From Macrostomum lignano (taxonomy: Eukaryota): a stretch of DNA of 64,000 bases. The notes under the pieces were generated by a model, which saw only the letters and a list, made by a program, of their open reading frames with translations, searched no databases and was not told the DNA's origin. Positions 4,046-55,937 of the stretch are shown here, piece by piece. The translations under genes were made by a program, and so were the position numbers. The stretch covers positions 372,001 through 436,000 of the forward strand of contig NIVC01000414.1 of assembly GCA_002269645.1 (NCBI GenBank), written 5' to 3'. Numbering within the stretch: position 1 is the stretch's first letter; every line of letters starts with the position of its first letter.

Positions 4046-4514
4046 TCAGCTCTGACCAGTTGGGGCCTTTTGCAGCCTCCTCCAGCACCGCTTGGCCAGG
4101 CTCGGGTCCAGAGAGATTTTGTAGCCGAGCTGAGCAACTGTCTGAGCTACACAGAGGTAGGTGGTTTTTTCCACTTTGTTCTCCACCGGGTTCTGCATCA
4201 TGTCGCGGTTCACTCGGGTCATGATGTTCAGCAGGTCGTCCTCCGCATAGTGCCGCTCGATCATCCGGCACAGGGTTTGCACGAACTTGGAGCCGGTCTC
4301 AGAAAACCTGTAGGAGTACTGGTTCTCTGTGGTGGCGTAGCACAGCAGGAAGTCGGCCTTGGCAGGGGGGGGAGAAGGCCGGCACGGGCTCCGGGACTTG
4401 CGGCTCGTTGGACTTCGAACTGCTGTCGTCTAGGGGTGCATCGTGATGCTGACCGCGGCAGGCCTGGATGAAGAATATCTTCGGCTTGCCGGCCAGGCTG
4501 CGGCAGCAGCTCGA
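4046..4514 (-). CDS. Caspase exon 2: catalytic Cys motif, inter-subunit linker and p10
   Basis: After acceptor CTCCAG (4515-4516) it reads SSCCRSLAGKPKIFFIQACRG. After a 1-nt shift in the G8 run it reads ADFLLCYATTENQYSYRFSETGSKFVQTLC, matching the caspase p10 motifs ADFL..Y.T and S.R...GS.F. Confidence 0.9.
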
Positions 4515-7500
4515 CTGGAGGGGAGAGTGGCGCTGAGAGTGGCGCTGAGAGTGGCGCTGAGAGTGGCGCTGGGAGTGGCGCTGAGAGTGGCGCTGGGAGT
4601 GGCGCTGGGAGTGGCGCTGAGAGTGGCGCTGAGAGTGGCGCTGAGAGTGGCGCTGGGAGTGGCGCTGGGAGTGGCGCTGAGAGTGGCGCTGAGAGTGGCG
4701 GAAAAAGTATTAACAGCTTCTGTTCCCACCTGAAATATTTTGGTGACATCAGGAATTCTGCACGGCCTTCCGTCCGAGCCGAACACGCAGTCCGGGCTGC
4801 CGTGAGCCATGAGGAAGCAGACAAAGCAGCCGTGCCGCTCCAGCTGGTCTGAGCAGCGCTGGAGCTGCATCAGGCATTGGAGAATTTCATTGGCTGTGAG
4901 GTCCTCCTCCAACTGCACGGTGAATCGCAGCTTTTGAAAGACTTCATTCACTCGCTGCACATCCAGCTGTGAGCCGTCGCGATCCTCATGAGTACTTGTG
5001 TACTTGTTGATGTTGATGATGAGGCAGAAGCCCTGCGGGTCCGTCACTGGGTAGAAAACTTCATCAAATCTGAAATGTCGCCAGAGTTTTTGCTGTGTTG
5101 CAGCTGTGTGTGCTGTAGCTGTGTGCTGTAGCTGTGTGTGCTGTAGCTGTGTGCTGTAGCTGTGTGCTGTAGCTGTGTGTGCTGTAGCTGTGTGCTGTAG
5201 CTGTGTGCTGTAGCTGTGTGTGCTGTAGCTGTGTGCTGTAGCTGTGTGCTGTAGCTGTGTGCTGTAGCTGTGTGTGCTGTAGCTGTTTGCTGAAGGAACT
5301 CACGGCGGTGCCAGAGGCTCGTCGAAGTAAATCTTGCCGTCGTACCTTAATAGACAATGCGGAGTCTGAAGTCAGGGGAACTCAGGTGAGAGACGATGTT
5401 CTGTGCTTTATTTCTTCTTTTTGCTTATATCAACTATGAAAAAATCGTAATTATTTTCTTTTATCTTACAGACAATTATCAGAAAATTGCATACGTTAAA
5501 ACTCAACTGCAATGTGCACAGCAAAATGCTTACTGGTGTCTCACAGCTCGCAGGCAGCTGAACATTAATATTCAACTGGCAATCTGCAGTCAAACTGCAC
5601 TGCAAACTCCCTCAATGCAGCTCAGTCAGTGTCTGCTGCCCATTTAAACTACAAAAATGTAAAAATGCCCAGTCAGAGCAACTGCAGTCAGCTGTTCAAT
5701 ATTCAATCATAAATTACAGAATAATGTTTATCGATGATAAATCAAAGTCAGAGAGACATTCTCAGTCGCCATGGAAACTCACCCACGCAGCAGCTCAGCC
5801 AGTTCGCTCCTTCTCTTCTCTGTGGCCAAATCCAGCGCTGTCCTGCCGTCTCTGTCCTTCAGGCTCCAATCCGCTTCTGAGTCCAGCAGAACCCGACCGA
5901 CTGCGGCGGCGGTGGCGGGGGGCGCAAAGGCTGCCCACATGAGGGGCGTCCAATCCTTTTGACTCTTGGTATTGGCGGAGGCTGCGGCAGCCGGCACAGC
6001 GGAGGCTCCGGCAGAATTGCTAGCATTGGCTGCACTGTGCAGTGAATGCATTCGGATACTCGTACAACGAACGCTCGGACATCAAAGGTCATTAATGCGC
6101 TAAGACAGCGATTTTGTGAAAAATCAGCACAAGAGATTCTTTGGTCCTACGGAGGACCTCAATTTAGCTAGGATTTGTTCACTGCTTTCTTGTGAAGATG
6201 GAAAGTGGAGCACAGAGTATCGTCTCCGACTTACAGAGCAATAGCAGAGCCAACAAGTCGGCAGTGAAGGAAATGAAAAAGCTTCTGCGAGGTTCATGGA
6301 ATCCGCAGTCAGAGAAGATCGACTGGGACAAGTTTTGCCAAGGAATATTGATATTTTGCTACACGCCAAGGTGGCTCGCCATGATGGCAAGTCGCCGGCG
6401 CAAATCCTGTTTGGCCACCCAGTCCGAGTTTTGCCAGCTCATAGACGATTTTTTGCAAAGGAATTGCAGAAAACAGCTGATCAAATTGAAGCCAAAGCAA
6501 CTAGTATGAGGGATAAAATTGTCCAACATTACAACAAGACAGCTTGTTGTAATTGAATTTCAAGTTTGCGCTTGCGCGTCACTCTGAGACAATTTTGGCC
6601 ACAGACAGTCTGAATTGAATTTTTTCTGTTTCAATAGAAAGGGACTTTGAATTTAATTTCCGCAAGCCCTAATATGCTTGTTTTTTTAAACAAGAAGGTA
6701 AAATGGTGTAGAAGATATAAATAATATATAAGAGCGAAGAGCCCGGCTAGAAAAGGGAATCAGATCCATCAACCATATTTGTGTCTCATTGAATATACAA
6801 CAGCCATGGAAACTCACCTACGCAGCAGCTCAGCGGCTTCGATATTTCCGTTCTCCACGGCCAAATCCAGCGGAGTCTTGCCGTCGTTGTTCTTAATGCT
6901 CCAATCCGCCCCTGCGTCCAGCAGAAGCCGAACGACTGCGGCGGCGGTGGCGGTGGGGGGCGCAAATTCGGCTGCCTCCATGAGGGACGTGTCTCCTAGC
7001 CCCGTGGCATTGGCGGAGGCTCCGGCACTCAGCAGAGCGGAGGCTGCGGCAGAATTGCCAGCCCGTGCTGCATGGTGCAGACAACTGCCAGCATATTTAT
7101 CTGCACAGGTGGGGTCACCCAGATGCACCAGCTGCTTCCACAGAGCCTCATCACCACACGATCTGCTGTGAGCTGCCCACATCAGCGAGGTGCGACCCCA
7201 TTTGTCAGGCAGGTCGCAGCTGTCGCGGGTCGCCGCTCGCCGCAGCCCCGCCGAGTCGCCCGCCTCGGCCAGCCGCTGCAGTTTCTGTCGATCCGCCTCC
7301 TCCTGCAAAGGGGAGCGGGAAAGTTGAGCACAGCTGCTCAGCTGCAGCCGCATCGGCACCGCAGATGCCGCTCACCTGGGCTGTAAGACCGGAGATCTTG
7401 CCATATGCATCCACAACCAGCCGCATCTCCCTGCAACAGCAAAAATGAGCAGCGAATTTTGCAATTTTCTCAAATCCAATTCAAATGCGATCGCCAAAAT

Positions 7501-8909
7501 ATATGTTTTTGTTTTACAATAAAATTTTAATAATAGACTAAATAATCAGAAATTCCTAATTATCTGAGCTGCTCGCAGATGGAGTTTCCAAGAGGACTGC
7601 AGCAGCACTGCAACAATCAGCATTGGCGAGAGCGCATCCGACTTCTCACACGCAGCTCATTTTCCATTTCTGCAGCATGAGTTTCCTTCCATCTCACAAT
7701 GTCTCACAAAGCACTCACGCACAGCCTCCCAGTTCTCCATCTGCAGCTCAACCCACACACTCTCACTGCACACCGAGGCCCTACAGCTTCCATTCTCGAC
7801 TGAGATCGACCGGCACCCCATTGGCTGTGAGGCAGCCAGCCAATCACAGCTCTCGCCCATCAAGCAGTCAGACAGAGACAAGCTCAGCTGACTGGCTCTG
7901 ATTGGCTGGCCTGAGACTGCAGCTCTGGCCACCCCAGCCGAATGCTGCAAAACTTGATGGACACAGCAGCGAACTGCTCACTCACCGCTCGATGTAGCTG
8001 GCCAGCTCTGAGTGGCCGCTGAGCCTCGCCAGGTCCGACGCTGTCCGACTCTCGCGATTCTTCAGTCCGAGCAGCTCCGACCTCTTCGAGTTTCCGTGCT
8101 CAGAGCACTCATTGAACCTTATCTGCCTGAGCAGGTGCAGCAGGTGCTTAGCGCATTTCCAGCTTCCAGTCCGCGCCGCCTCCATCAGCGGAGTGGCGCC
8201 GTTTTTGTTCCGCAGCCACTTCGCATCGAACGACAGCAGCGTCAGCAGCCGCAGGTGGTCCCGCCGGGCTGCCAGGTGCGCAGCCGTGTCGCCGTTCGCG
8301 TCAGCCGCCTTGGGGTTCGCGCCCAGCTCAAATAAGTACAAGATGCACTTTTCAGTGTGCACGGGAGTCTCAGGAGCGCCGAACACCCGCATGAGGACGT
8401 TCCGACGAGCTGCATTAGCGCAAGTAACCAGCTGGCGCGTTGCCAGCTGCGGCACCTGGCCGAAGTCACCTCGGATGACGAGCTGGGCGAGAATCGTTAT
8501 GTCCAATTGCTAATAGGACAAATAACGAAAATGGAACTCAAGTTTCATTGCGGAAAATTGCGCGTTTGATAAATAGTAAAATTAAGAATGTGAGCGCTAT
8601 CGTTTTTTGATATGCGACATGTTTCGGTTCGCGTCAGGCATCGTCAGGGTCTTAAAATTAGCAACGATTTATTTCTGTATTTATTAACCGTATATATATA
8701 AATTTAGACGTGAAACGGGGTCGATAAAAATCAGAAATGTAAATTAAATATACAGTAGATTGCAAGGTCTAGCTTAGTAAATTTTTCGCAAATAATTTTC
8801 CACCATTCATAAGAGCTCAAACGAGTACAAACTAAAAGTGCTTAAGTCCCTGTATATAAAATTGCGTTAATCAATACTAAATAAACAACTTGTCAATAAT
8901 GGTGCCGGT

Positions 8910-8962
<53 letters not shown>

Positions 8963-11900
8963 GCCAATCGGGTGCACCAGAACCTTCGGCTAAAAGCTAA
9001 GTCAGCGACTGCGCCTTGCTTAGTTCTCGATCTACGAGTATTTAATGGCAGTTTTCTGACCATGTCAGGCGACTGTCAGGCCAACTTTTATCATTGAATT
9101 CCCCCGCAACACCACAAACGTGGCCGCCAGTTCAACTTGACCTTCCGCTGGACTCACGAAGATCCCAACAGCGGTGCCACCGGGGCTTTCTTGGCCCCAT
9201 CTGCACCTAGTGCCACCAAGACTGCCATTCCCAGCACCGTAATCTCTCTGGCTACAAGCCTGGCACCAGTCGATCTCGACGAGAGCGCCCAATCTGCCAA
9301 ACATCGTAGGATCTCAGAGGTCGTCTGCTCTAACGTGGAGGACATCACCACGACAGCCAGCACGATCGCAGCAACAAACAATGAATCCACGGCTAGCATG
9401 AGCACGGAGACCAACGCCGACTCGGTAGCGGACGGCGCTATTGGGGACGTGGCAGCGAGCGCCGATGCGACGATCAGCAACGACCCGCCAGCGGTTGCGG
9501 TTGGGGCTCCGGTAGGCAGTCCGGCGGCCGGTGGGACCACCGAAGTCGCCTCACCCGACAACGGCTGTACGTCGGCGGCTGACGACCTTTTTGTGACCCC
9601 GCCTCTTCCACGGGTGGGACTGCCTGCTTCACCTGCTGAACGTCGCTTACCATCGCCGGACTCTGAGGACTCCCCTGGTGGTCCGGAACGCCACAGGCCG
9701 CATCTGAATGACTCACCTTTGAGCAGCCCGGTACGCTCATCATCAGCAGGGACTTCCGGAACCTGGTCCTCTGCCCAAAGCCTTTCGAGGGCCTCAAACT
9801 GCTGGCAATCACAGAGGTGCATGAGTACTAAATGTCAGCCTTACCATCACTACGAAGGTCGGCCGCCCTGCGGAACCGGCAATGCGCTCAGTCAACGGTG
9901 CTGGTCCTGGCGGACGAGCTGCTCAGCACAGACCACTGGCGAGAGTCGCTCTCTGAGGCCATCGATCTACTGAGAGATCCTTCTTGTTCCGCCCTTTGCC
10001 AGCGGTGAAGGATTGACTCAAATTCTGAGTAAGAAACTCTCACCTATTAGAGAAATGAAGGCCAACACCAACATATAATAAATTATTTTAATAGCCAACG
10101 CGTTTCGACACAAGCGGTCGTCTTCAGGGCTTGCACTCATGATTCACATACAGTTCAGTATACTTAAATAGAGAAAATCAAGATCTGTACATGGCAATAG
10201 ACAAATGGGTTCAGTCCGGTCGATAATTGTACATTACGAGACGAAACTATAATAAATTATTTGGCCATCACACAGAAAACACCTCTCGCCAATAGCAGCC
10301 CGCCCCCCTTCATGGGGAAATCAGTAAAGGAGGTTCCCTCAAAACGTAGAAGGGATGAGTGCAACTTGTTTGTGCTTGAGAACCAAAAACTGGTAGAGAA
10401 TTTGACAACGGTACAGATCAAAGGCAACCTAGAGGTGCCAGAGACCAAAGCGATTCAGGGGCTCAAGCGAAACAGCTCCGTCCTTATAAAAAGCCGGACA
10501 AAGGCAACGCAGTGGTCATCATGCACCCTAATGATTACGAATTTGCAGCCTACAACCAATTGCTTGACACTAATGCCTATCAACAGCTGGACCAGCCACT
10601 GCAACCCGAGACTGTGGAACTTATTAGGGGGATCTTCCTCGATTTATGTAACAGAAAGTTCATATCTAAGAAACAGTTTTCTTTTCTTTGTCCCGGAGAG
10701 AACTTCCGTCCCCGGCATTTCTACCTGCTCCCAAAAATTCACAAGGACCCGGCCACCTGGCTGATCCCCTTTCGGGTCCCAGCAGGCAGACCTATTGTTA
10801 GCGGATGCAGTTCTGAAGCAATTGGGGCAGAAAAGTACATAGACTTCTTTCTAAAACCGATTGCCCAAGCGCAACCCACTTTCATTAAGGACTCCTATGA
10901 CTTCAAGGCACACCTTATGGATAAAAGCTGCAAGGAAGGTTCGACTCTGGCAACTTGTGATGTCCAGAGTCTGTACTCCATAATCCCAATAGATCAGGGC
11001 ATTGCAGCGATCCAGGAATTCTTTAACCGATACCCGGATCCCATTAGACCGGATGCTGAAATAATAAAGCTACTGGAATTGTGTTTGTACAGGAATGACT
11101 TCGAATTTGACAAAATGATTTTCCTACAACTTAGAGGTACAGCCATGGGGCGCATATTTGCGCCCAGCTATGCCTGCCTCTTCATGAGCCTCTGGGAGGA
11201 AACTGCCCTGAGAACTGCTCTTTATAAGCCCAACATCTATTTTAGGTACATAGATGATATCTTCATTCACTGGGACCACCCGGCTGAAGCTCTGACAGAA
11301 TTTGTTGTACACCTAAATTCAATCAACCCCAACATCAAACTCACCGTCAGCTCCTCATCAACTGAGGTCAGTTTTCTTGACATGACCATCAAGAAAGCTG
11401 AAAACCGCTTCACAACACAACTGTTTTCAAAAGAAACAGACACTCATAGATTGTTGCACCGACAGTCCTTCCATCCGTCACACACCTTCAAGGGGGTAGT
11501 AAAATCCCAAATCCTTCGGTACGCTCGAATCTGTGATGACTACAAGTCTTTCAACGATGCTTTCAATTCTTTAAAATCGGAACTCAAGCAATTAGGCTAC
11601 TCGAAGATTTTTCTTAGAAACTGCAAAAAGGAGGTCCTCAAACTTATGAACTGGACTGCAGGACCAACGACCAATCTGTGTTTGCTTCCCAAAGGGTTCC
11701 ATCCCTGTGGGTCATCCCGCTGCAAATGCTGCACCCACTCACCGCCTGCTCTCTCCGCCCAGGGGCTGAAACCGGCTTCCGATGTTTTAGTCTCTCAGAG
11801 CCTGTCCTGTGGCTCCAAGAACATCATCTATGGCATCTCCTGTAACCAGTGCCACCCTGGGAAAATCTTCTATGTAGGTATGACTAGAAGAACAATGAGA

Positions 11901-12435
11901 GATAGAATGAACCAGCACAGGTCAAATATTAACAGGAGAATCGTTACTTCGGGGTTAGAGCACTTTCTCACTCCCAATCACTCGATTGCAAACTTTTTCT
12001 CCATTGCTATCGAACAAGTTCTTAATAGCAACAAAATCGAACTAAGGGAATAAATCTGGATTAAAAACTGGGGACTGACAAACCGCCGAATGCGAGCATC
12101 AGGGTCGACAATCACCTTCTCCGACCCATCCCATTGGTCCTTCCTTTTCACCCATCTACGGTCTGGCTTTCCAACGAGATAGCTAAAAACTTTGATAAGC
12201 TACAAAATAAACCATGCTCCCGCTAGACGAAACAGGCAGTACATCCCTCATATGTACTCGTACAAGTACTCATCAATTTTATCAGACTCAGAAAAATTAC
12301 TTAAAAGACCTATTTGCATTGCATTACGGCCTGACGAAGAGCCCAGAGGCTCGAAACCGGTAGCCCATATTCAATATTTTCAACACGCCGTTACCTCTCT
12401 TCTCTCTCTACCTCTCTCTCTCTAATCTCTCTCCA

Positions 12436-12492
<57 letters not shown>

Positions 12493-12505
12493 CCATCTCT
12501 CTCTT

Positions 12506-12570
<65 letters not shown>

Positions 12571-13147
12571 TTCTCTCCTTGTTCTCCATCTCTCTCCGCG
12601 CCTTTCATTGCTACTCTGAGAGTGCTCCTCAAGACTTTGCAATCTACGTTAATTTAATGTACATTTCTGACTTTTATCGGCTGGCACTGTTTGATCGGAA
12701 ATTTTCGAGTGAGGGTACATTTTGTCGTGGCAGTAAAAGTCGGCTGACCGAGGCGAGAGCGGTTATATTAGCTCGTATAAAAAAAAACTTGATAACGCGC
12801 GAAGAGGCCTATTATTGATCGTGCAACTTCGCGAATACGCTCTAAATACACACAAGTAGGGAAAAAACGGACCGATTAGGGGCACCACGCGCAAAAATAG
12901 GAATGGGAGTACGAATAGAAGTAGAAGAGATATGATAAGTGTGATGTTTTATGCCTGGCTGCTGAGTTTCTGCTACTGCCCGGTTTCTATAGTTTGGCTG
13001 AGTGAGTTTCTGCAACTGCAATTGCACCCAAGCTGAACATGAGGACGTAAGAACAAGGCAAAAAGTTTGTTTTAATTTACTGCTTGAACTCGCAAAAGTA
13101 AGTACTTTAAAATAAAAATGCTGTACCTTCGAAGTTCCATTGCCCAT
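4046..13147 (-). CDS. Ankyrin-repeat / caspase fusion gene (copy 1). Exons: 13127-13147, 7986-8509, 7376-7430, 6818-7302, optional 5783-6034, 5304-5345, 4730-5069, 4046-4514
   Basis: All junctions are GT..AG with matching phases (0,2,0,2,2,2,0). The product has about 8 ANK repeats, the linker YDGKIYFDEPLAPP and a caspase domain (644 aa, or 728 aa with the optional exon, after removing one G from the G8 run at 4365-4372). Exon 1 assignment is less certain than the rest. Confidence 0.78.
4520..4700. repeat. 12-bp minisatellite (GAGAGTGGCGCT) inside the 215-bp caspase intron 4515-4729
   Basis: 12-nt period; lies between the GT donor and AG acceptor that rejoin p20 in frame. Confidence 0.92.
4730..5069 (-). 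CDS. Caspase exon 1: p20 with catalytic His
   Basis: FYPVTDPQGFCLIININ...DRDGSQLDVQRV..F..LRF.V...DLTA...CFVCFLMAHG. Acceptor TTTCAG at 5070-5071 and donor CAG|GTGGGA at 4729. Confidence 0.92.
5100..5286. repeat. (TGTGCTGTAGC)n 11/13-bp repeat in the linker-to-caspase intron
   Basis: Direct reading; the same repeat recurs at 55938-56115 and 58255-59550. Confidence 0.92.
5783..6034 (-). CDS. Partial duplicate of ANK exon B (B'), symmetric phase 2-2, 252 nt
   Basis: Encodes DWTPLMWAAF...DGRTALDLATEK..ELAELLRG with the same GTGAGT donor as full B exons. Candidate acceptor CACAG at 6035-6036. Confidence 0.6.
6125..6545 (+). mobile_element. Degenerate Ty3/Gypsy integrase fragment
   Basis: SAVKEMKKLL...YTPR..DGKSPAQILFGHPVR.LP...HYNKTA across two frames resembles the C-terminal half of Gypsy integrase (AE..VK..K, NTP..G.SPAQ.LFGR). 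Confidence 0.7.
6818..7302 (-). CDS. ANK exon B, copy 1 (4 ankyrin repeats)
   Basis: GRTSLMWAA, SCLHHAARAGN, GDTSLMEAA, DGKTPLDLA. Acceptor TTTGCAG and donor AG|GTGAGT. Confidence 0.9.
7986..8509 (-). CDS. ANK exon A, copy 1 (about 4 ankyrin repeats)
   Basis: NGDTAAHLAA, NGATPLMEAARTG, SRTASDLARLSGH. Donor CG|GTGAGT at 7985. Confidence 0.9.
8920..8961. repeat. (CT)n microsatellite, left of the Penelope element
   Basis: Direct reading. Confidence 0.95.
9137..9973 (+). CDS. Ser/Pro/Thr-rich ORF upstream of the Penelope RT, probably element-encoded
   Basis: 278-codon low-complexity ORF lying inside the (CT)n-bounded element. No domain recognised. Confidence 0.35.
   Translation: MTFRWTHEDPNSGATGAFLAPSAPSATKTAIPSTVISLATSLAPVDLDESAQSAKHRRISEVVCSNVEDITTTASTIAATNNESTASMSTETNADSVADGAIGDVAASADATISNDPPAVAVGAPVGSPAAGGTTEVASPDNGCTSAADDLFVTPPLPRVGLPASPAERRLPSPDSEDSPGGPERHRPHLNDSPLSSPVRSSSAGTSGTWSSAQSLSRASNCWQSQRCMSTKCQPYHHYEGRPPCGTGNALSQRCWSWRTSCSAQTTGESRSLRPSIY
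10093..10131 (-). ncRNA. Minimal type I hammerhead ribozyme, antisense to the PLE ORF
   Basis: Reverse complement reads AGCC-CTGAAGA-C-GAC/GTC stem II-GAAAC-GC-GTT-GGCT: conserved core, 4-bp stem I and palindromic mini stem III typical of PLE hammerheads. Confidence 0.7.
12328..12365 (+). ncRNA. Minimal type I hammerhead ribozyme in the PLE 3' pseudo-LTR
   Basis: GGC-CTGACGA-A-GAGCC/GGCTC stem II-GAAAC-CG-GTA-GCC. Predicted cleavage after A12362. Confidence 0.8.
12394..12600. repeat. Imperfect (CT)n microsatellite, right of the Penelope element
   Basis: Direct reading. Confidence 0.95.
12964..13010 (-). pseudogene. Detached 5' piece of ANK exon A (KLTQPNYRNRAVAETQ)
   Basis: Preceded by CAGTTGCAG acceptor and a single copy of the 54-bp unit seen at 37.9 and 61.8 kb. 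Aligns with KLTQPDPSNRASVGD of copy 3. Confidence 0.7.
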
Positions 13148-13435
13148 TATGCGCGCTTCGATCAGATGATCTCAACTCAGCCTAAAAAGAAAAGAAAACT
13201 GCATGACCAGCCGCCCCGCCCAGCACAGCAGTTTTTTTATCGGCCTCAGAAGACATTGTCAGAGAGATTCACTGCTCACGGCTTATTGGCCGAATGCGAG
13301 CCTCGGTCTCTGATTCTTCTCCGTACGGAATGCATACTACTTATGGCAGTAGCGTTTGGAGTGCAGACTTGCAGAGTTGAGTGGGCAGTGAAAAATTGCA
13401 AAGATAAGAGAGGAGATGAAGAAAGGACTCAACAG

Positions 13436-15380
13436 TGGCAGATAGAACATACAGATAGAAGATACAGATAGAACATACAGATAGAAGATACAGATAGAAC
13501 ATACAGATAGAAGATACAGATAGAACATACAGATAGAAAATACAGATAGAACATACAGATAGAACATACAGATAGAACATACAGATAGAACATACAGATA
13601 GAACATACAGATAGAAAATACAGATAGAACATACAGATAGAACATACAGATAGAACATACAGATAGAAAATACAGATAGAAAATACAGATAGAACATACA
13701 GATAGAACACCCAGATAGAACATACAGATAGAACATACAGATAGAAAATACAGATAGAAAATACAGATAGAACATACAGATAGAACATACAGATAGAACA
13801 TACAGATAGAACATACAGATAGAAAATACAAATAGAACATACAGATAGAACACCCAGATAGAACACCCAGATAGAACACACAGATAGAACATACAGATAG
13901 AACATACAGATAGAACATACAGATAGAACATACAGATAGAACATACAGATAGAACATACAGATAGAACATACAGATAGAAGATACAGATAGAACATACAG
14001 ATAGAACATACAGATAGAACATACAGATAGAACATACAGATAGAACATACAGATAAAAGATACAGATAGAAGATACAGATAGAAGATACATATAGAACAT
14101 ACAGATAGAACATACAGATAGAACATACAGATAGAACATACAGATAGAAGATACAGATAGAAGATACATATAGAACATACAGATAGAACATACAGATAGA
14201 ACATACAGATAGAAAATACAGATAGAAAATACAGATAGAACATACAGATAGAACATACAGATAGAACATACAGATAGAACATACAGATAGAACATACAGA
14301 TAGAAGATACAGATAGAAGATACAGATAGAAGATACATATAGAACATACAGATAGAACATACAGATAGAACATACAGATAGAACATACAGATAGAAGATA
14401 CAGATAGAAGATACATATAGAACATACAGATAGAACATACAGATAGAACATACAGATAGAACATACAGATAGAAGATACAGATAGAAGATACATATAGAA
14501 CATACAGATAGAACATACAGATAGAACATACAGATAGAACATACAGATAGAACATACAGATAGAAAATACAGATAGAACATACAGATAGAACACCCAGAT
14601 AGAACATACAGATAGAACATACAGATAGAACATACAGATAGAACATACAGATAGAAGATACATATAGAAAATACAGATAGAACATACAGATAGAACACCC
14701 AGATAGAACATACAGATAGAACATACAGATAGAAAATACAGATAGAAAATACAGATAGAACATACAGATAGAACACCCAGATAGAACATACAGATAGAAC
14801 ATACAGATAGAACATACAGATAGAACATACAGATAGAACATACAGAAAGAACATACGGATAGAACATACGATAGAACATACAGATAGAACATACAGATAG
14901 AACATACAGATAGAACATACAGATAGAACACACAGATAGAACATACAGATAGAACATACAGATAGAACATACAGATAGAAAATACAGATAGAACATACAG
15001 ATAGAACATACAGATAGAACATACAGATAGAAAATACAGATAGAAAATACAGATAAAACATACAGATAGAACACCCAGATAGAACATACAGATAGAACAT
15101 ACAGATAGAAAATACAGATAGAAAATACAGATAGAACATCCAGATTGAAAATACAGATAGAAAATACAGATAGAACATACAGATAGAACACCCAGATAGA
15201 ACACACAGATAGAACATACAGATAGAACATACAGATAGAACATACAGATAGAACATACAGATAGAACATACAGATAGAACATACAGATAGAACATACGAT
15301 AGAACATACAGATAGAACATACAGATAGAACACACAGATAGAACATACAGATAGAACATACAGATAGAACATACAGATAG
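13436..15380. repeat. 13-bp tandem array (GAACATACAGATA), about 150 copies
   Basis: 13-nt period; the translated ORF repeats every 13 aa (CSICMFYLYVLSV). Confidence 0.97.
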
Positions 15381-15687
15381 AGCATCTTTCGCAGAAAGGA
15401 CATGTACAATGTACATGTACTTTGCACGATTCTCATGGACTCCAGAGAGTGCACAGCGCCGAACGTCCACCAGATGCCATCGCCCACGTAGTCTGCCCGA
15501 GACAGACCTCTGCCGTCATTGCTTGCCTTCAGAGGAACTATGGAACTTCTGCTGCTCCTATTTCTGGCTGCGCCGGTGCCTTCTAAGAGCAGCACAGCCC
15601 GTTGATACATGCAAACTGTGCGCTCATTTCTGACTGCAGTATTCTGTCTGTGAGAGTTGAGACAGCACCCTGGCAGCAGAGAGCAGC

Positions 15688-18600
15688 CTCTATTCACTGG
15701 TTTGTGTCCGGTTCTACTCACTGGTTTGTGTCCGGTTCTATTCACTGGTTTGTGTCCGGTTCTATTCACTGGTTTGTGTCCGGTTCTATTCACTGGTTTG
15801 TGTCCGGTTCTATTCACTGGTGTGTGTCCGGTTCTATTCACTGGTTTGTGTCCGGTTCTATTCACTGGTTTGTAGCCGGTTCTATTCACTGGTGTGTGTC
15901 CGGTTCTATTCACTGGTGTGTGTCCGGTTCTATTCACTGGTTTGTGTCCGGTTCTATTCACTGGTGTGTGTCCGGTTCTATTCACTGGTTTGTGTAAGGT
16001 TCTATTCACTGGTTTGTGTCCGGTTATATTCACTGGTGTGTGTCCGGTTCTATTCAATGGTGTGTGTCCGGTTCTATTCACTGGTTTGTGTCCGGTTATA
16101 TTCACTGGTGTGTGTCCGGTTCTATTCACTGGTGTGTGTCCGGTTCTATTCACTGGTGTGTGTCCGGTTCTATTCACTGGTTTGTGTCCGGTTCTATTCA
16201 CTGGTTTGTGTCCGGTTCTATTCACTGGTTTGTGTCGGGTTCTATTCACTGGTGTGTGTCCGGTTCTATTCACTGGTTTGTGTCCGGTTATATTTACTGG
16301 TGTGTGTCCGGTTCTATTCACTGGTTTGTGTCCGGTTCTAAACACTGGTTTGTGTCTGGTTCTATTCACTGGTTTGTGTCCGGTTATATTCACTGGTGTG
16401 TGTCGGGTTCTATTCACTGGTGTGTGTCCGGTTCTATTCACTGGTTTGTGTCCGGTTATATTCAATGGTGTGTGTCCGGTTCTATTCACTGGTGTGTGTC
16501 CGGTTCTATTCACTGGTGTGTGTCCGGTTCTATTCACTGGTTTGTGTCCGGTTCTATTCACTGGTTTGTGTCCGGTTCTATTCACTGGTTTGTGTCGGGT
16601 TCTATTCACTGGTGTGTGTCCGGTTCTATTCACTGGTTTGTGTCCGGTTATATTTACTGGTGTGTGTCCGGTTCTATTCACTGGTTTGTGTCCGGTTCTA
16701 AACACTGGTTTGTGTCTGGTTCTATTCACTGGTTTGTGTCCGGTTATATTCACTGGTGTGTGTCGGGTTCTATTCACTGGTGTGTGTCCGGTTCTATTCA
16801 CTGGTTTGTGTCCGGTTATATTCAATGGTTTGTGTCCGGTTCTATTCACTGGTGTGTGTCCGGTTCTATTCACTGGTTTGTGTCCGGTTCTATTCACTGG
16901 TTTGTGTCCGGTTCTATTCACTGGTTTGTGTCCGGTTCTAAACACTGGTTTGTGTCTGGTTCTATTCACTGGTTTGTGTCCGGTTCTATTCACTGGTGTG
17001 TGTCGGGTTCTATTCACTGGTTTGTGTCCGGTTCTATTCACTGGTTTGTGTCTGGTTCTATTCACTGGTTTGTGTCGGGTTATATTCACTGGTGTGTGTC
17101 GGGTTCTATTCACTGGTGTGTGTCCGGTTCTATTCACTGGTTTGTGTCCGGTTATATTTACTGGTGTGTGTCCGGTTCTATTCACTGGTTTGTGTCCGGT
17201 TCTAAACACTGGTTTGTGTCCAGTTCTATTCACTGGTGTGTGTCGGGTTCTATTCACTGGTTTGTGTCCGGTTCTATTCACTGGTTTGTGTCCGGTTCTA
17301 TTCACTGGTGTGTGTCCGGTTCTATTCACTGGTGTGTGTCCGGTTCTATTCACTGGTTTGTGTCCGGTTCTATTCACTGGTTTGTGTCCGGTTCTATTCA
17401 CTGGTTTGTGTAAGGTTCTATTCACTGGTTTGTGTCCGGTTATATTCACTGGTGTGTGTCCGGTTCTATTCAATGGTGTGTGTCCGGTTCTATTCACTGG
17501 TTTGTGTCCGGTTCTATTCACTGGTGTGTGTCCGGTTCTATTCACTGGTGTGTGTCCGGTTCTATTCACTGGTTTGTGTCCGGTTATATTTACTGGTGTG
17601 TGTCCGGTTCTATTCACTGGTTTTTGTCCGGTTCTATTCACTGGTTTGTGTCCGGTTCTATTATTCACTGGTTTGTGTCCGGTTCTATTATTCACTGGTT
17701 TTTGTCCGGTTCTATTCACTGGTGTGTGTCGGGATCTATTCACTGGTTTGTGTCCGGTTCTATTCAATGGTTTGTGTCCGGTTCTATTCACTGGTGTGTG
17801 TCTGGTTCTATTCACTGGTTTGTGTCCGGTTCTATTCACTGGTTTGTGTCCGGTTCTATTCACTGGTTTGTGTCCGGTTCTAAACACTGGTTTGTGTCTG
17901 GTTCTATTCACTGGTTTGTGTCCGGTTCTATTCACTGGTGTGTGTCGGGTTCTATTCACTGGTTTGTGTCCGGTTCTATTATTCACTGGTTTGTGTCCGG
18001 TTCTATTATTCACTGGTTTGTGTCCGGTTCTATTATTCACTGGTTTTTTGTCCGGTTCTATTCACTGGTTTGTGTCCGGTTCTATTATTCACTGGTTTGT
18101 GTCCGGTTCTATTATTCACTGGTTTGTGTCCGGTTCTATTATTCACTGGCTTGTGTCCGGTTCTATTCACTGGTGTGTGTCCGGTTCTATTCACTGGTTT
18201 GTGTCCGGTTCTATTCACTGGTGTGTGTCCGGTTCTATTCACTGGTTTGTGTCCGGTTCTATTCACTGGTTTGTGTCCGGTTCTATTCACTGGTGTGTGT
18301 CCGGTTCTATTCACTGGTTTGTGTCCGGTTCTAAACACTGGTTTGTGTCTGGTTCTATTCACTGGTTTGTGTCGGGTTATATTCACTGGTGTGTGTCGGG
18401 TTCTATTCACTGGTGTGTTTCCGGTTCTATTCACTGGTTTGTGTCCGGTTATGTTTACTGGTGTGTGTCCGGTTCTATTCACTGGTTTGTGTCCGGTTCT
18501 AAACACTGGTTTGTGTCTGGTTCTATTTACTGGTTTGTGTCCGGTTATATTCACTGGTGTGTGTTGGGTTCTATTCACTGGTGTGTGTCGGGTTCTATTC

Positions 18601-34549: not shown

Positions 34550-34915
34550 GTGGGTGATTGGGATGCTGGGTGATGGGGATGCTGGGTGATGAGGATGCTG
34601 GGTGATGGGGATGCTGGGTGATGGAGATGCTGGGTGATGGGGATGCTGGGTGATGAGGATGCTGGGTGATGGGATGGTGGGTGATGGGGATGCAGGGTGA
34701 TGGGGATGGTGGGTGATGGGGATGCTGGGTGATCGGGATGCTGGGTGATGGGGATGCTGGGTGATGGGGATGGTGGGTGATGGGGATGGTGGGTGATGGG
34801 GATGCAGGGTGATGGGGATGGTGGGTGATGGGGATGCTGGGTGATCGGGATGCTGGGTGATGGGGATGCTGGGTGATGGGGATGCTGGGTGATGGGGATG
34901 CTGGGTGATGGGGAT
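34550..34915. repeat. 16-bp minisatellite (TGGGTGATGGGGATGC)
   Basis: 16-nt period. Confidence 0.92.
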
Positions 34916-35870: not shown

Positions 35871-36218
35871 GCTCGCTGTTTTATTGTAAAAATCTGTAAT
35901 ATTAACAGAAAATAACAAAGAAAGTTCAGATGTTAAAGTTAAACTTAACTGTCACAGCAAAATGCTTGCTGGTCTCTCACAGCTCGCAGGCAGCTGAACA
36001 TTAATATTCAACTGGCAATCTGCAGTCAAACTGCACTGCAAACTCCCTCAATGCATTTCAGTCAGTCCCTGCTGCCCATTTAAACTACAAAAATGTAAAA
36101 ATGCCCACTCAGAGCAACTGCAGTCAGCTGCTCAATATTCAATCATAAATTACAGCATAATGTTTATCAATGATACATCAAAGTCAGAGAGACATTCTCA
36201 GTCGCCATGGAAACTCAC

Positions 36219-38304
36219 CCACGCAGCAGCTCAACCAGTTCGCTCTTTTCCCACTTTGTGGCCAAACGCAGCGCAGTCTTGCTGAATTTGTCCTTCAGGC
36301 TCCAATCCGCCCCTGAGTCCAGCAGAACCCGACCGACTGCGGCGGCGGTGGCGGGGGGCGCAAAGGCTGCATGCATGAGGGGCGTGAATTCACACAGACC
36401 CCTGGCATTGGCGGAGGCTCCGGCAGACAGCAGAGCGGAGGCTGCGGCAGAATTGCCAGCCCTGGCTGCCCACTGCAGGTAACTGATACCCCATATATTC
36501 GCACAGGTGGGGTCACCCAACTGCACCAGCTGCTCCCACAGAGCCTCATCACCGCACGAGCTGTTTCCAGCTGCCAACATCAACGCGGTGACACCCAAAC
36601 TGTAAGGCAGGTCGCAGTTGCCGCGGTTCGCCGCTCGCCGCAGCCCTGCCGAGTCGCCCGCCTTGGCCAGCCGCTGCAGTTCCTGTCGATCCGTCTCCTC
36701 CTGCAAAGGCGAGCGGGAAATTTGAGCACAGCTGCTCAGCTGCAGCCGCATCGGCACCGCAGATGCCGCTCACCTGATCTGTCAGGCCGGAGATCTCGCC
36801 ATGTGCATCCACAACCAGCCGCATCTCCCTGCAACAGCAAAAATGAGCAGCGAATTTGCAATTTTCTCAAATCCGACAACTACGATCGCGAAAACAATTT
36901 TGTAGTTGTAAATTTAGAATTTAGTAAACAGAAATTCTTAATTCTCTGAGCTGCTCGCAGATGGAGTTTTTGAGAGGACTGCAGCAGCTCTGCAACAATC
37001 AGCATTGGCGAGAGCGCATCCGACTTCTCACACGCAGCTCATTTTCCATTTCTGCAGCATGAGTTTCCTTCCATCTCACAATGTCTCACAAAACACTCAC
37101 GCACAGCCTCCCAGTTCTCCATCTGCAGCTCAACCCACACACTCTCACTGCACAGCGAGGCCCTACAGCTTCCATTTTCGACTGAGATCAACCGGCACCT
37201 CATTGGCTGGGAGGCAGCCAGCCAATCACAGCTCTGCCCCATCAAGCAGTCAGACAGAGACAAGCTCAGCTGACTGGCTCTGATTGGCTGGCCTGAGACT
37301 GCAGCTCTGGCCACCCCAGCCGAATGCTGCAAAACTTGATGGACACAGCAGCGAACTGCTCACTCACCGCTCGATGTAGCTGGCCAGCTCTGAGTGGCCG
37401 CTGAACCTCGCCAGGTCCGACGCCGTCCGACCCTCGAGATCTTTCTTTTTGAGCAGCCGCGACCTCTTCAAGTTTCCTTGCCCAAAGCACCCATTGAGCC
37501 CGTACTGCCAGAGCAGGTGCAGCAGGTGCTTGGCGCATTTCCAGCTTCCAGTCCGCGCCGCCTCCATCAGCGGAGTGGCGCCGTTGTCGTTCCGCAGCCA
37601 CTTCGCATCGAACGACAGCAGCGCCAGCAGCCGCAGGTGGTCCCGCCGGGCTGCCAGGTGCGCAGCCGTGTCGCCGTTCGCGTCAGCCGCCTTGGGGTTC
37701 GCGCCCAGCTCAAATAAGTACAAGATGCACTTTTCAGTGTGCACGGGAGTCTCAGGAGCGTCGGCCGCCAGCATGAGGACGGTCCGACGAGCTGCATCAG
37801 CGCTGGTGACCAGCTGGCGCGTTGCCAGCCGTTGCACCCGGCCGAAGTCACCTCGGATGACGTCGTGGGCGAGAGTCTGGAGATCGGCTGGTGAGTCTCC
37901 GACGCTTGCCCGGTTGCTGGGGTCCGGCTGAGTGAGTTTCTGCAACTGCAATTGAGGCATCCAAGCTGCACATTCAAACATGTGAGTGAGTTCCTGCAAC
38001 TGCAATTGAGGCACCCAAGCTGCACATTCAAACATGTGAGTGAGTTCCTGCAACTGCAATTGAGGCACCCAAGCTGCACATTCAAACATGTGAGTGAGTT
38101 GCTGCAACTGCAATTGAGGCACCCAAGCTGCTCATTCAAACATGTGAGTGAGTTGCTGCAACTGCAATTGAGGCACCCAAGCTGCACATTCAAACATGTG
38201 AGTTCCTGCAACTGCAATCAAGCCAACAGATATTATTATGCTTTCAGTTCTTTACTCGAACTTACTTTCTCGTCAGGAAATGGTGGTTTGCCTTGCCAAG
38301 CCAT
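36219..38304 (-). CDS. ANK gene copy 3 lacking linker and effector exons. Exons: 38266-38304, 37368-37939, 36774-36828, 36219-36700
   Basis: MAWQGKPPFPDEK|GTAAGT; exons A, 55-nt and B are open with canonical phase-matched splice sites. No linker exon follows. May be a pseudogene or an ANK-only gene. Confidence 0.75.
37930..38215. repeat. 54/50-bp tandem repeat containing the exon A splice acceptor
   Basis: Unit GAGTGAGTTCCTGCAACTGCAATTGAGGCACCCAAGCTGCACATTCAAACATGT, about 5 copies. Confidence 0.9.
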
Positions 38305-54917: not shown

Positions 54918-55937
54918 TCATTTCCTTGCACTAAAAAACGAGCTGAAGAATCCAGGCTGCAGCTTCCTGCCCGTCAGGAACTCGTGCTCCAGCAGCTCAT
55001 GCGCGGATCTTCTCCTCCTGCGGTCCTTGGCGGTGCAGCGGCTGTAAAAATCCCTCAGCTCTGCGGACCGGCCGTCCGGCAGGGCGGGGACGCCCTTCCT
55101 GTCGATCAGCTGGGCCATTTCTAACAGGCTTTTGGCGTTCGCGAACGGCCTCACGCCGGACGCCATCTGAAAGACCGAGCAGCCGAACGCCCAGATGTCC
55201 GACTCTCTGCTGTACTGCAAGCTGTCTGACTCTCCCGCTCCGAGCAGCTCCGGCGCCATGAAGTTCAGAGTGCCTTTGGGTGACGGAGTGGAGGCTGAGA
55301 TGTGGCTGACTGACTGCTCCAGCTTGATTGACAGGCCGAAGTCGATCAGCTTGATTTGCGTGTTGTCAGCACAAACAATTATGTTCGAGCAGTTGATGTC
55401 TCTGTGGATAACGAGCGGCTGCCGGCTGTGCAGGTAGAGCAGCGCGCGGCAGATCTGCGAGCGGTCGGTCAGTGAGCAGTCATCATTCATGGGAACATGG
55501 AACAGGAGCATCAAGGATGCACAATGCTCACCTGCTCGCTGAAGTCTCGAATCTTTGGCTCGTCCAGCGGCTTGTTGTCGATAAACCTCTCCAAGCTTCG
55601 GCCGTCCAGCAGCTCCATGAACACAACGACTGCGGCGGGCTCCGGCTGAGCGATGTGCAAGAACCTGACGATGTTGGGATGCCGCAGTCGGCACAGGTTT
55701 CTCTCGCTCTCGACAGCTCTGTGAATCTCTGTGCTCACAGAGGTTTGGTCATCACCGAGCTGCACAGGCAGTCTGAGAGTCTTGGCAGCGCACGTGACGC
55801 CCGTGTCAGTTCGAACTTCGTGGACCTCGCCGAAGCCTCCGCGGCGGATGAGGCGAAGGGCATCCCAGCGCTCCAGGAACGGGGGACCTTCGGGTCTGAG
55901 GGGATGCGGATTCAGGCAATGAGGGATAATTTGCATG
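54918..55937 (-). CDS. MEKK/STE11-like protein kinase domain, two exons with a 77-bp intron at 55455-55531
   Basis: GGFGEV, AAK, E..L.RLRHPNIVRF, FMEL, HRDINCSN, KLIDFG, GTLNFMAPE, SDIWAFGC, LLEHEFL. The intron has CAG|GTGAGC and CGCAG|ATC. Confidence 0.93.

What the first reader, a model, noticed from the sequence alone, without database searches (positions are those of the whole stretch)
4046..13147. Caspase whose prodomain is an ankyrin array rather than CARD or DED
Seen: spliced ORF of about 8-10 ANK repeats, a linker and a caspase with catalytic His (AHG), catalytic Cys (QACRG), both S1-pocket Arg motifs (DRDGSQ, SYR) and Asp residues (DAPLDD) in the inter-subunit linker. Knowledge: metazoan initiator caspases normally use CARD or DED prodomains for induced proximity. 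Inference: a self-contained sensor-protease activated by ligand binding to the ANK array.
Basis: partly seen in the sequence, partly recalled or inferred. Interest (0 to 1): 0.85.

Follow-up and report, generated by a model that had tools for sequence, protein, structure and literature searches.

The report
Flatworm caspase with ankyrin-repeat prodomain
This stretch of Macrostomum lignano (free-living flatworm) DNA carries a caspase gene whose long front end is an ankyrin-repeat array, a design already reported in parasitic flatworms; this copy belongs to a large, fast-diversifying Macrostomum family and is broken by a one-base frameshift as assembled.

Summary
On the minus strand, seven exons (8509..4046), all with GT-AG borders, read in one frame. 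They encode about 10 ankyrin repeats plus 2 caps, a short linker and a complete caspase domain (Pfam E=1e-51). The catalytic His, QACRG Cys, both S1 arginines and an LDD|S linker site are present. A C8 run (G8 on +, 4365-4372) shifts the frame 40 residues after QACRG; seven C's would restore a 721-residue protein.

The organism is Macrostomum lignano. No public protein model joins ANK to caspase at this locus, but transcript-based models of paralogues with the same exon order do.

The architecture is not new. 'ANK caspases' were described in Schistosoma (2014) and across parasitic flatworms (Genome Biol Evol 2024, evae204). That paper says free-living flatworms lack them. M. lignano in fact has at least 10 clusters of them.

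The window's gene sits in a Macrostomum-specific clade. Its ANK cassette is also fused to MAP3K-like kinases; a neighbour in the window shares the same linker exon and microsatellite intron. Family variation concentrates on canonical ANK binding positions (p=3e-13), with dN/dS of 1 or more and intact ORFs. This gives some support to a recognition role.

Verdict: a new lineage-specific variant of a known kind; this copy may be disabled.

The parts
13127..13147 (-). Candidate first coding exon, ATG GGC AAT GGA ACT TCG AAG (MGNGTSK), followed by a GT donor. It fits the N-myristoylation-type MGxxxS consensus. Inferred, not verified.
   Evidence: Sequence read. Paralogues start MGSAASS (P0110), MGSWFSK (P0129) and MGSGSSV (P0363/4).
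12975..13009 (-). 5' remnant of exon 2 (KLTQPNYRNRAVAE) after a ttgcag acceptor. Homology to paralogues (LTQPDPSNRASVG...) ends here.
   Evidence: compared with unit 3 and with P0110.
8510..12974 (.). About 4.4 kb inserted into what is one continuous exon in paralogues. It contains a Penelope-like retroelement ORF (10512..12053, + strand) and a (GA)n tract. It must be spliced out or it truncates the 5' end.
   Evidence: RVT_1 plus GIY-YIG hits. ORFs. The same insertion is present in haplotype L001.
7986..8509 (-). ANK exon A: N-cap plus 4 ankyrin repeats. Acceptor tattag|, donor |gtgagt.
   Evidence: Pfam Ank_2 and Ank, splice borders, AF2 helices 38-178.
7376..7430 (-). Small link exon (R)EMRLVVDAYGKISGLTAQ, a beta-hairpin between the two ANK blocks.
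   Evidence: Present in P0104, P0007, P0110 and P0129.
6818..7302 (-). ANK exon B: cap plus 4 ankyrin repeats, ending AAELLR.
   Evidence: Pfam Ank families at E=2e-17..
5783..6034 (-). ANK exon B': a partial duplicate of the 3' part of exon B (2 repeats). Spliced B to B' in the annotated allele P0104.
   Evidence: Low pLDDT at the B/B' joint, residues 364-379.
5304..5345 (-). Linker exon YDGKIYFDEPLAPP. Its donor CC|gtgagt is phase-compatible with the caspase exon. The same exon precedes the kinase exons at 56208.
5070..5303 (-). Intron made of a (TACAGCACACAGC)n microsatellite. This is the joint after which paralogues and haplotypes differ: caspase here, kinase in unit 2, unrelated sequence in L001.
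4730..5069 (-). Caspase exon p20a, carrying the S1 Arg (EDRDGSQ) and the catalytic His (MAHG, codon 4804..4802).
4515..4729 (-). Intron containing a 12-nt microsatellite (GCCACTCYCAGC)n.
4046..4514 (-). Caspase exon p20b plus p10: QACRG (Cys codon 4460..4458), the LDD|S linker, SYR, and stop TGA at 4048..4046. It is interrupted by the frameshift.
4365..4372 (-). C8 homopolymer (G8 on +) that shifts the frame by +1. C7 would read PAFSPPAKADFLL, matching paralogue PALYPPESDFLF. The copy encoding P0001 implies C6.
54918..58205 (-). Neighbouring paralogue (unit 2): the same ANK A+B cassette, the same linker exon and the same microsatellite intron, but followed by a MAP3K/STE-like protein kinase domain. 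It matches P0114.
59778..61871 (-). ANK A+B cassette, unit 1. No effector exons identified before unit 2.
36215..38122 (-). ANK A+B cassette, unit 3 (matches P0143). No effector exons identified downstream.

Best explanation
The locus is a member of a Macrostomum-specific, tandemly expanded family of long-prodomain caspases. In this family the usual CARD or DED is replaced by an ankyrin solenoid of about 450 residues.

Shown here:
- A complete caspase catalytic apparatus.
- An in-frame, canonically spliced exon chain: ANK A, link, ANK B, B', linker, p20, p10.
- The same chain in paralogues whose models join ANK to caspase.
- The same ANK+linker cassette fused to MAP3K-like kinases, and in P0230 to kinase plus caspase.
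- Family variation concentrated on the canonical target-binding face of the repeats.

Inferred mechanism:
1. The ANK solenoid is a variable recognition or recruitment module. In some members it is probably membrane-anchored by N-myristoylation.
2. Binding of a multivalent partner brings zymogens together.
3. The caspase domains dimerise and cut their own linker after LDD.
4. The active enzyme cleaves after Asp.
5. Sister genes deliver a kinase output from the same kind of recognition module.

New combinations seem to arise by recombination in the microsatellite-filled intron behind the linker exon.

This particular copy carries a +1 frameshift in a C8 run between p20 and p10. It is either an assembly error or a very recent lesion, at roughly even odds. 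If real, the copy makes only an ANK or ANK-p20 product without protease activity.
For: Caspase domain:
- Pfam Peptidase_C14 E=1e-51.
- Alignment to caspase-3 has R64, H121, C163 and R207 equivalents, and LDD|S opposite IETD|S.

Gene structure:
- Seven exons with GT-AG borders read in one frame, giving 721 residues if C8 is read as C7.
- The AF2 model has mean pLDDT 87.3 with about 10 ANK repeats plus a caspase fold.
- The caspase exon has no in-frame ATG upstream of the S1 Arg.

Paralogues:
- ANK+caspase sits in one model in P0110, P0129, P0140, P0151, P0007, P0223, P0224, P0228, P0249, P0316 and others.
- Locus L002 has the same exon order, and its transcript-based CDS runs from ANK into p20a.
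- QACRG or QACRT, and MAHG, are kept in nearly all family members.

Shared cassette:
- The cassette plus linker exon plus microsatellite intron is shared with the neighbouring kinase gene.
- That kinase is closest to MAP3K5/ASK1.
- P0230 is ANK+kinase+caspase.

Variation:
- Entropy at ANK positions 2, 3, 5, 13 and 14 is 2.83 bits against 1.51 elsewhere, p=3e-13, with a sharp register control.
- dN/dS is 0.9-1.9 between the four cassettes in the window: 2.0 at contact codons and 1.24 at the rest.
- No stop codon occurs where 6.2 are expected under neutrality, P=0.002.

Frameshift:
- The C7 reading PAFSPPAKADFLL matches paralogue P0005 PALYPPESDFLF.
- The copy encoding P0001 implies C6, so two copies bracket the in-frame length.
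Against: - No transcript or protein model in the searched collections joins ANK to caspase at this locus.
- The closest annotated allele, P0104 (97% identical, transcript-based annotation), ends just after the linker exon.
- P0104's contig has unrelated sequence instead of caspase exons behind the microsatellite.
- As assembled, the caspase ORF is broken.
- Homopolymer lengths mostly agree between the window and the second haplotype. Only 3 of 15 indels in 8.3 kb lie in homopolymers, and a C9 run agrees. The G8 may therefore be real.
- The 5' exon is split by a 4.4-kb insertion.
- Other copies carry lesions too: a TAA before QACRG in L002, and QAGRG in P0007.
- dN/dS is also about 1.2 outside the contact positions. 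Relaxed constraint explains part of the variation.
- No ligand, oligomerisation or protease activity was or could be tested.
Confidence: 0.6

Rival explanations
1. This copy is a decaying relic. The G8 frameshift is real, the 5' exon is disrupted by a retroelement-bearing insertion, and exon B' is a rearrangement scar. The locus yields at most an ANK-only or ANK-p20 protein with no protease activity. Such a product could be a decoy or have no function.
For: - The ORF stops 40 codons after QACRG.
- The allele-like contig L001 lacks the caspase exons, and its annotated product P0104 is ANK-only.
- P0001's copy is also out of frame at the same run.
- Other family copies carry a nonsense codon or have lost the catalytic Cys.
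- Substitution rates in exons and introns are about equal between the window and L001: 1.1% against 1.3%.
- Most homopolymers agree between the two haplotypes.
Against: - Apart from the single extra C, the caspase exons are undamaged. All catalytic and S1 residues are present.
- They are 99-100% identical in protein to the second copy, P0001.
- The two copies differ from the in-frame C7 in opposite directions (C6 and C8). That pattern is more typical of homopolymer miscalls than of two independent fixed mutations.
- Homopolymer length differences between haplotypes do occur in this region, for example T9 against T8 at 12787.
Confidence: 0.4
2. The ANK array is not a variable sensor. It is a fixed adaptor or autoinhibitory domain. 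It either docks the zymogen to one conserved partner, the way CARD and DED do, or masks the protease until it is removed. The observed variability reflects only weak constraint in young duplicates.
For: - dN/dS is about 1.2 even outside the contact positions.
- dS between cassettes is small, 0.03-0.24, so the duplicates are young.
- The binding-face positions of ANK repeats are the least constrained in any ANK family (established knowledge of the ANK consensus).
- PMC11463336 proposes an unidentified ANK-binding activator for ANK caspases.
Against: - ORFs are maintained against a neutral expectation of 6.2 stops, P=0.002.
- Contact codons have a clearly higher dN/dS, 2.0.
- The entropy contrast is sharp in register.
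- At least 85 distinct cassette sequences exist in one genome, which is hard to reconcile with a single conserved partner.
Confidence: 0.25
3. Two separate genes lie head to tail: an ANK-only gene ending after the linker exon, and an independent short-prodomain (executioner-like) caspase gene.
For: - Both public annotations split the locus into P0104 (ANK-only) and P0001 (caspase-only).
- The closest solved structure by sequence is caspase-3.
- Some family members are annotated as caspase-only (P0002, P0004, P0005).
Against: - There is no in-frame ATG before the essential S1 arginine of the caspase exon.
- The caspase-only models are 5'-partial and begin inside translated microsatellite or ANK sequence (P0002, P0003, P0004, P0008).
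- The linker-exon donor and the caspase acceptor are canonical and phase-matched.
- Paralogues with identical layout are joined in transcript-based models.
Confidence: 0.1
4. The juxtaposition is an assembly chimera created at the microsatellite.
For: - The join lies in a 230-bp microsatellite.
- A second contig diverges exactly there.
Against: - The same ANK, linker exon, microsatellite, effector layout recurs at the kinase gene in this window and at independent contigs.
- Splice phases match.
Confidence: 0.03

Closest known systems
ANK caspases of parasitic flatworms (Schistosoma, Trichobilharzia and Taenia 'subfamily C14A unassigned peptidase' or 'caspase-8'; Lee et al. 2014 Trends Parasitol 30:75; Genome Biol Evol 2024 evae204, PMC11463336)
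   Same: - Ankyrin repeats replace CARD or DED as a long N-terminal prodomain of a caspase with an intact QACRG/His dyad.
- Found in the flatworm lineage.
- Proposed to act as initiators.
   Different: - In a neighbour-joining tree, the window's caspase falls in a Macrostomum-only clade (91% bootstrap). It does not group with the neodermatan ANK caspases; monophyly of all flatworm ANK caspases has 0% support.
- A different M. lignano gene does group with them: P0323 (Mlig019067), at 83%.
- The window's ANK module shows no specific similarity to theirs beyond being ANK.
- The published work states that free-living flatworms lack ANK caspases.
- The Macrostomum family is multi-copy and hypervariable, and it shares its cassette with kinases.
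[quoted passage not shown]
   Same: - Same species and the same caspase clade.
- P0230 starts with the same kind of ANK module (residues 12-349).
   Different: - P0230 has a kinase domain between ANK and caspase, and the window's gene has none.
- In the window, the kinase version and the caspase version are separate neighbouring genes.
DED initiator caspases (caspase-8/-10)
   Same: - Long non-catalytic prodomain.
- Caspase domain about 35% identical, E=1e-37 to PDB caspase-8.
- An Asp site in the intersubunit linker.
- Presumed proximity-induced activation.
   Different: - No death-fold domain; only ANK families were detected by Pfam.
- No FADD-type adaptor logic is known.
Human caspase-3 (closest solved structure by sequence, for example PDB 3pd0 and 4jr0)
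   Same: All catalytic and S1-pocket residues align, and the linker processing site aligns.
   Different: Caspase-3 has a 28-residue prodomain and is activated by upstream caspases. This protein has about 450 residues of ANK solenoid.
Hypervariable repeat recognition modules joined to swappable effectors (fungal and animal NLR-type proteins with ANK, TPR, WD or LRR arrays; designed DARPins as the structural analogue). A comparison from general knowledge, not a tested membership.
   Same: - A constant repeat framework with variation focused on DARPin positions 2, 3, 5, 13 and 14.
- Many paralogues in TE- and satellite-rich tandem clusters.
- The same recognition cassette is attached to different effector domains.
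   Different: - No NACHT or NB-ARC nucleotide switch.
- No evidence yet for non-self ligands or an immune role.

Membership tests
Peptidase family C14A (caspases) | Significant match to the Peptidase_C14 profile above the curated cut-off | tested here: met
   176.2 bits against a cut-off of 21.4, E=1.1e-51.
Peptidase family C14A (caspases) | Catalytic His-Cys dyad (xHG and QACxG) | tested here: met
   MAHG and QACRG align with H121 and C163 of caspase-3.
Peptidase family C14A (caspases) | S1 pocket for Asp: Arg in p20, Gln before the Cys, Arg in p10 | tested here: met
   EDRDG aligns with R64, QACRG supplies the Gln, and SYR aligns with R207. The p10 Arg is reached only if the frameshift is corrected.
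Peptidase family C14A (caspases) | Uninterrupted p20-linker-p10 reading frame | tested here: not met
   The C8 run at 4372..4365 shifts the frame, and a stop follows 40 codons after QACRG. C7 would restore the frame.
Peptidase family C14A (caspases) | Asp-specific endopeptidase activity | not testable with these tools
   Needs recombinant enzyme and peptide substrates.
ANK caspases (Lee et al. 2014; PMC11463336) | Ankyrin repeats and the caspase domain in one polypeptide, with ANK N-terminal | tested here: inconclusive
   The exon chain is in-frame with canonical splice sites, and paralogue models are joined. No model or transcript joins them at this locus; P0104 and P0001 are separate.
ANK caspases (Lee et al. 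2014; PMC11463336) | Caspase domain belongs to the published monophyletic flatworm ANK-caspase clade | tested here: not met
   Neighbour-joining tree with 100 bootstraps. Neodermatan clade 100%. Neodermatan plus M. lignano P0323 83%. The window's Macrostomum clade 91%, and separate. All flatworm ANK caspases together 0%. The method is rough and deep nodes are unresolved.
Death-fold initiator caspases (CARD or DED) | CARD or DED in the prodomain | tested here: not met
   Pfam finds only Ank families in the upstream exons. AF2 shows an ANK solenoid.
Hypervariable repeat recognition modules | Variation concentrated on the binding face with a conserved framework | tested here: met
   Mean entropy 2.83 against 1.51 bits, Mann-Whitney p=3e-13. 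The register-shift control peaks at 0.
Hypervariable repeat recognition modules | Positive or diversifying selection | tested here: inconclusive
   Pairwise dN/dS is 0.9-1.9: 2.0 at contact codons and 1.24 at the rest. ORFs are kept, P=0.002. No codon site model or recombination control was run, and only four DNA copies were available.
Hypervariable repeat recognition modules | Different paralogues bind different ligands | not testable with these tools
   Needs binding experiments.

The most novel reading that the evidence does not exclude
Macrostomum lignano carries a germline repertoire of dozens of ankyrin 'receptors'. Their binding faces diversify under selection. Their outputs are swapped between a death protease (caspase), a stress kinase (MAP3K-like), or both, by recombination in a microsatellite intron. 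This would be an innate recognition-to-effector system built without death-fold or NACHT domains. It would also mean that ANK caspases are not an adaptation to parasitism.
Probability: 0.25. Interest if true: 0.8.

Novelty: new variant of a known kind. Interest (0 to 1): 0.45.

Why it matters
Caspases with ankyrin prodomains were recently presented as a hallmark of parasitic flatworms that arose with parasitism (PMC11463336). This window and its relatives show otherwise.

- A free-living, early-branching flatworm has an orthologue-like ANK caspase (P0323).
- It also has a separate, much larger home-grown family of them.
- That corrects the evolutionary picture: the architecture predates parasitism, or arose independently of it.
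- M. lignano is a transgenic and RNAi-tractable laboratory species, so it becomes a place to find out how an ANK prodomain activates a caspase. No activator is known.
- The shared ANK cassette on caspases and MAP3K-like kinases gives a concrete example of effector swapping by intron recombination.
- Variability focused on the binding face gives a testable lead towards a recognition function.

The single locus itself is of limited value because it may be a disabled copy.

Tried and rejected
1. A 40-nt GT..AG mini-intron (gtcccg...ccaag) also restores the frame. I rejected it for two reasons. It would delete 13 residues that paralogues keep. The sequence on both sides of the C run is homologous to paralogue coding sequence (PAFSPPAKADFLL against PALYPPESDFLF).

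2. I looked for any protein or transcript model with the exact ANK-to-caspase junction of this locus. None exists. The only near-identical caspase hit is the 5'-partial, frame-shifted P0001. The only near-identical ANK hit is the ANK-only P0104.

3. I fetched P0104's contig (L001) hoping to read the homopolymer in a second assembly. That contig has no caspase exons after the microsatellite. Its tail has no recognisable TE ORFs.

4. I used window-versus-L001 indels to judge homopolymer accuracy. The result is ambiguous: 3 of 15 indels are in homopolymers, and a C9 run agrees.

5. Pfam scans of ORFs in the B-to-B' spacer (6192..6556) and at 9137..9973 gave no hits. I therefore make no claim about what was inserted there.

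6. I found no specific similarity between this ANK module and the neodermatan ANK prodomains. The best hits outside Macrostomum are generic, mostly bacterial, ANK proteins.

7. The 5' end could not be settled. I found no good phase-0 donor that would splice out the 4.4-kb insertion in exon 2. P0104 starts at an internal Met.

8. No supplementary tables of PMC11463336 were available to check which M. lignano sequences that study used.
Full report
**What is there**

The window is eukaryotic, with microsatellites, satellites and retroelements. It comes from the flatworm Macrostomum lignano or a very close relative. UniRef and NCBI proteins of that species match its exons at 97-100% identity.

The finding lies on the minus strand. 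Three-frame translation and reading of the DNA give seven exons with AG/GT borders that stay in one reading frame:
- ANK block A, 8509..7986
- a 55-nt link exon, 7430..7376
- ANK block B, 7302..6818
- B', a partial duplicate of B, 6034..5783
- a 42-nt linker exon, 5345..5304 (YDGKIYFDEPLAPP)
- caspase p20a, 5069..4730
- p20b+p10, 4514..4046

The introns that flank the caspase exons are filled with microsatellites.

**Check of the observation**

The caspase part matches Pfam Peptidase_C14 at E=1e-51, and the ANK blocks match the Ank families. Against solved structures, the best match is human caspase-3 (E=4e-39), with caspase-8 close behind. In that alignment:
- EDRDG lies opposite R64.
- MAHG lies opposite H121.
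- QACRG lies opposite C163.
- SYR lies opposite R207.
- PLDD|S lies opposite the IETD|S maturation site.

An AlphaFold2 model of the 721-residue product was built with a 48-sequence family alignment. It has mean pLDDT 87.3 and shows about 10 ANK helix pairs plus two cap-like pairs and a caspase fold. It is disordered at the B/B' joint, the linker and the intersubunit loop.

A C8 run at 4372..4365 puts p10 out of frame, so the ORF ends 40 codons after QACRG.

**The frameshift**

With seven C's the protein reads ...PEPVPAFSPPAKADFLLCYAT. This lines up residue for residue with paralogues (for example P0005 ...NPALYPPESDFLFCF) and with caspase-3 (...PVEADFLYAYS). A 40-nt mini-intron that would also fix the frame is therefore rejected.

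UniRef model P0001 comes from a second, 99% identical copy. It reads exon p20b in the wrong frame and then enters the p10 frame. This implies six C's in that copy, and the gene predictor chose alternative splice sites to keep an ORF. Two copies thus bracket the in-frame length from opposite sides, with no other damage. That pattern looks like homopolymer miscalling.

Against this, the window and a second haplotype contig (L001) show only 15 indels over 8.3 kb. Three of them are in homopolymers, and a C9 run agrees between the two. Base accuracy is therefore not obviously poor. I leave the question at roughly even odds.

**Is ANK really joined to the caspase?**

At this locus no public model joins them.
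- NCBI BOX15_Mlig001598g17 (P0104, 430 aa, 97% identical) contains A, link, B, B' and the linker exon. This confirms those splices, including B to B'. It then reads into the next intron and stops.
- Its contig aligns to window 15995..5092 at 96-98%. Behind the microsatellite it has unrelated sequence and no caspase.

Three lines of evidence support the fusion as the design of the family and of this locus.
1. The linker-exon donor (CC|gtgagt) and the caspase acceptor (tttcag|A) are canonical and phase-matched.
2. The caspase exon has no in-frame ATG before the essential S1 arginine. A stand-alone caspase could not be made.
3. Many M. lignano paralogues carry the same ANK module and a caspase in one model: P0110, P0129, P0140, P0151, P0007, P0223, P0224, P0228, P0249 and more. 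At locus L002 the transcript-based CDS runs exon1(MGSWFSK)-A-link-B-linkers-p20a, with the same exon order.

However, exon 2 is split here by a 4.4-kb insertion containing a Penelope-like retroelement, and P0104 starts at an internal Met. The true N-terminus is unknown.

**Context**

The window holds four copies of the ANK A+B cassette, all on the minus strand: 61871-59778, 58205-56545, 38122-36215 and 8509-6818.

Behind the second cassette come the same intron, the same linker exon (56208) and the same (CTACAGCACACAG)n microsatellite. After the microsatellite comes a protein kinase domain instead of a caspase. That gene matches P0114, and its kinase is closest to MAP3K5/ASK1 and other STE-group kinases.

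The database holds about 50 M. lignano proteins with this cassette. Some are ANK-only, some ANK+kinase and some ANK+caspase. P0230 is ANK+kinase+caspase. The microsatellite intron is thus the joint at which effector exons differ between paralogues and even between haplotypes.

**Variation in the cassette**

- Among 85 distinct family sequences, entropy at the canonical ANK target-binding positions (2, 3, 5, 13, 14 of each repeat) averages 2.83 bits against 1.51 elsewhere. Mann-Whitney p=3e-13, and the contrast disappears when the register is shifted by one residue.
- Between the four cassettes in the window, dN/dS is 0.9-1.9. It is 2.0 at contact codons and 1.24 at the rest.
- With at least 195 substitutions, 6.2 stop codons are expected under neutrality. 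None is seen (P=0.002), and all indels are in frame.
- This fits diversifying selection on a recognition surface. Relaxed constraint contributes, and no proper site model was run.
- Most family caspases keep QACRG or QACRT and MAHG. Single copies carry lesions: P0007 has QAGRG, L002 has a TAA before QACRG, and the window has the frameshift. This is a birth-and-death pattern.

**Comparison with what is known**

The architecture is published.
- PMC11463336 (Genome Biol Evol 2024) describes 'ANK caspases' and credits their first identification in Schistosoma to Lee et al. 2014.
- It places them as sister to DED caspases and suggests they are initiators with an unknown activator.
- It states they are restricted to parasitic flatworms (plus one annelid) and that free-living flatworms lack them.
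- For M. lignano it reports only one caspase, with a kinase-like prodomain.

My searches show otherwise.
- M. lignano P0323 (Mlig019067) has ANK+caspase, and its best relatives are the Schistosoma, Trichobilharzia and Taenia ANK caspases. The Taenia match covers 87% of its length.
- In a neighbour-joining tree P0323 joins them with 83% bootstrap support.
- The window's gene sits in a separate Macrostomum-only clade (91%).
- All flatworm ANK caspases together get 0% support.
- ANK+caspase predictions also exist in a tick, a lobster, two gastropods and a jellyfish.

The Macrostomum family is nonetheless an undescribed, lineage-specific variant.

**Mechanism (inferred)**

1. The ANK solenoid is the recognition or recruitment part, and in some members it is membrane-tethered.
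2. Partner binding clusters the zymogens.
3. The caspase domains dimerise, cleave after LDD in the linker and become active.
4. Sister genes route the same kind of recognition to a MAP3K-like kinase.

Rivals, with my confidence in each:
- This copy is a relic (0.4).
- The ANK array is a fixed adaptor or autoinhibitor (0.25).
- Two separate genes (0.1).
- Assembly chimera (0.03).

**Verdict**

Novelty is moderate: a new variant of a known kind. Interest is 0.45.

Noticed in passing
window 15689-32724: A 17-kb satellite: about 710 tandem copies of a 24-nt unit (TCTATTCACTGGTTTGTGTCCGGT) at 95% identity, with extreme AT skew (-0.68). A 13-nt array of about 150 copies sits next to it at 13439-15385.
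   Followed up: no
window 54918-58205 (minus strand): A complete-looking ANK-cassette plus protein-kinase gene, 100% identical to UniRef model P0114. The kinase is closest to MAP3K5/ASK1. It shares the linker exon and the microsatellite intron with the caspase gene.
   Followed up: partly
window 37929-38218 and 61786-62183: A 54-nt tandem repeat lies just upstream of ANK exon A in units 3 and 1. Each unit ends in ...ttgcag, so the intron's 3' end and acceptor are repeated 5-7 times. This could offer alternative acceptors.
   Followed up: no
window 10260-12200 (+ strand): A Penelope-like retroelement: one 513-aa ORF with reverse transcriptase and a C-terminal GIY-YIG nuclease motif. It is antisense to the ANK-caspase gene and lies inside the insertion that splits that gene's second exon. 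Both Pfam hits are below the curated cut-offs.
   Followed up: partly
window 42448-45109 (+ strand): A non-LTR (LINE) retrotransposon with an APE-type endonuclease (E=1e-17) and a reverse transcriptase (E=7e-31). An upstream 323-aa ORF at 41086-42057 has no Pfam hit.
   Followed up: partly
window 49459-49803 (minus strand): An isolated fragment of a protein kinase C-lobe, similar to the kinase of unit 2 and without the rest of the domain. It is probably a pseudogene remnant.
   Followed up: no
L002 9163-9180 (NIVC01002066.1, paralogue Mlig006631g1): In this Mlig_3_7 copy a TAA stop replaces the Leu codon seen in the ML2-derived model P0140 (PK*CSS against PKLCSS). The stop lies just before the catalytic QACRG, so the annotated protein P0129 ends there.
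   Followed up: partly
L001 14200-23160 (NIVC01001872.1): The haplotype or paralogue contig is 96-98% identical to window 15995-5092. Directly after the microsatellite intron it continues with 9 kb of unrelated sequence that has no caspase exons and no recognisable TE ORFs. This is a structural difference at the effector joint.
   Followed up: partly
proteins P0320, P0337, P0247, P0248, P0301: ANK plus caspase predictions exist outside flatworms: the tick Haemaphysalis longicornis, the lobster Homarus americanus, the gastropods Haliotis rufescens (caspase N-terminal, ANK C-terminal) and Batillaria attramentaria, and the jellyfish Sanderia malayensis. This is at odds with the statement that the combination is absent from ecdysozoans. 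All are gene predictions.
   Followed up: no
window 2601-3047, 34551-34918, 38868-39275, 39561-39986, 47057-47337, 48139-48732, 58254-59551: Numerous further minisatellite and microsatellite arrays (periods 15-59 nt) are open in several frames and generate long spurious ORFs.
   Followed up: no
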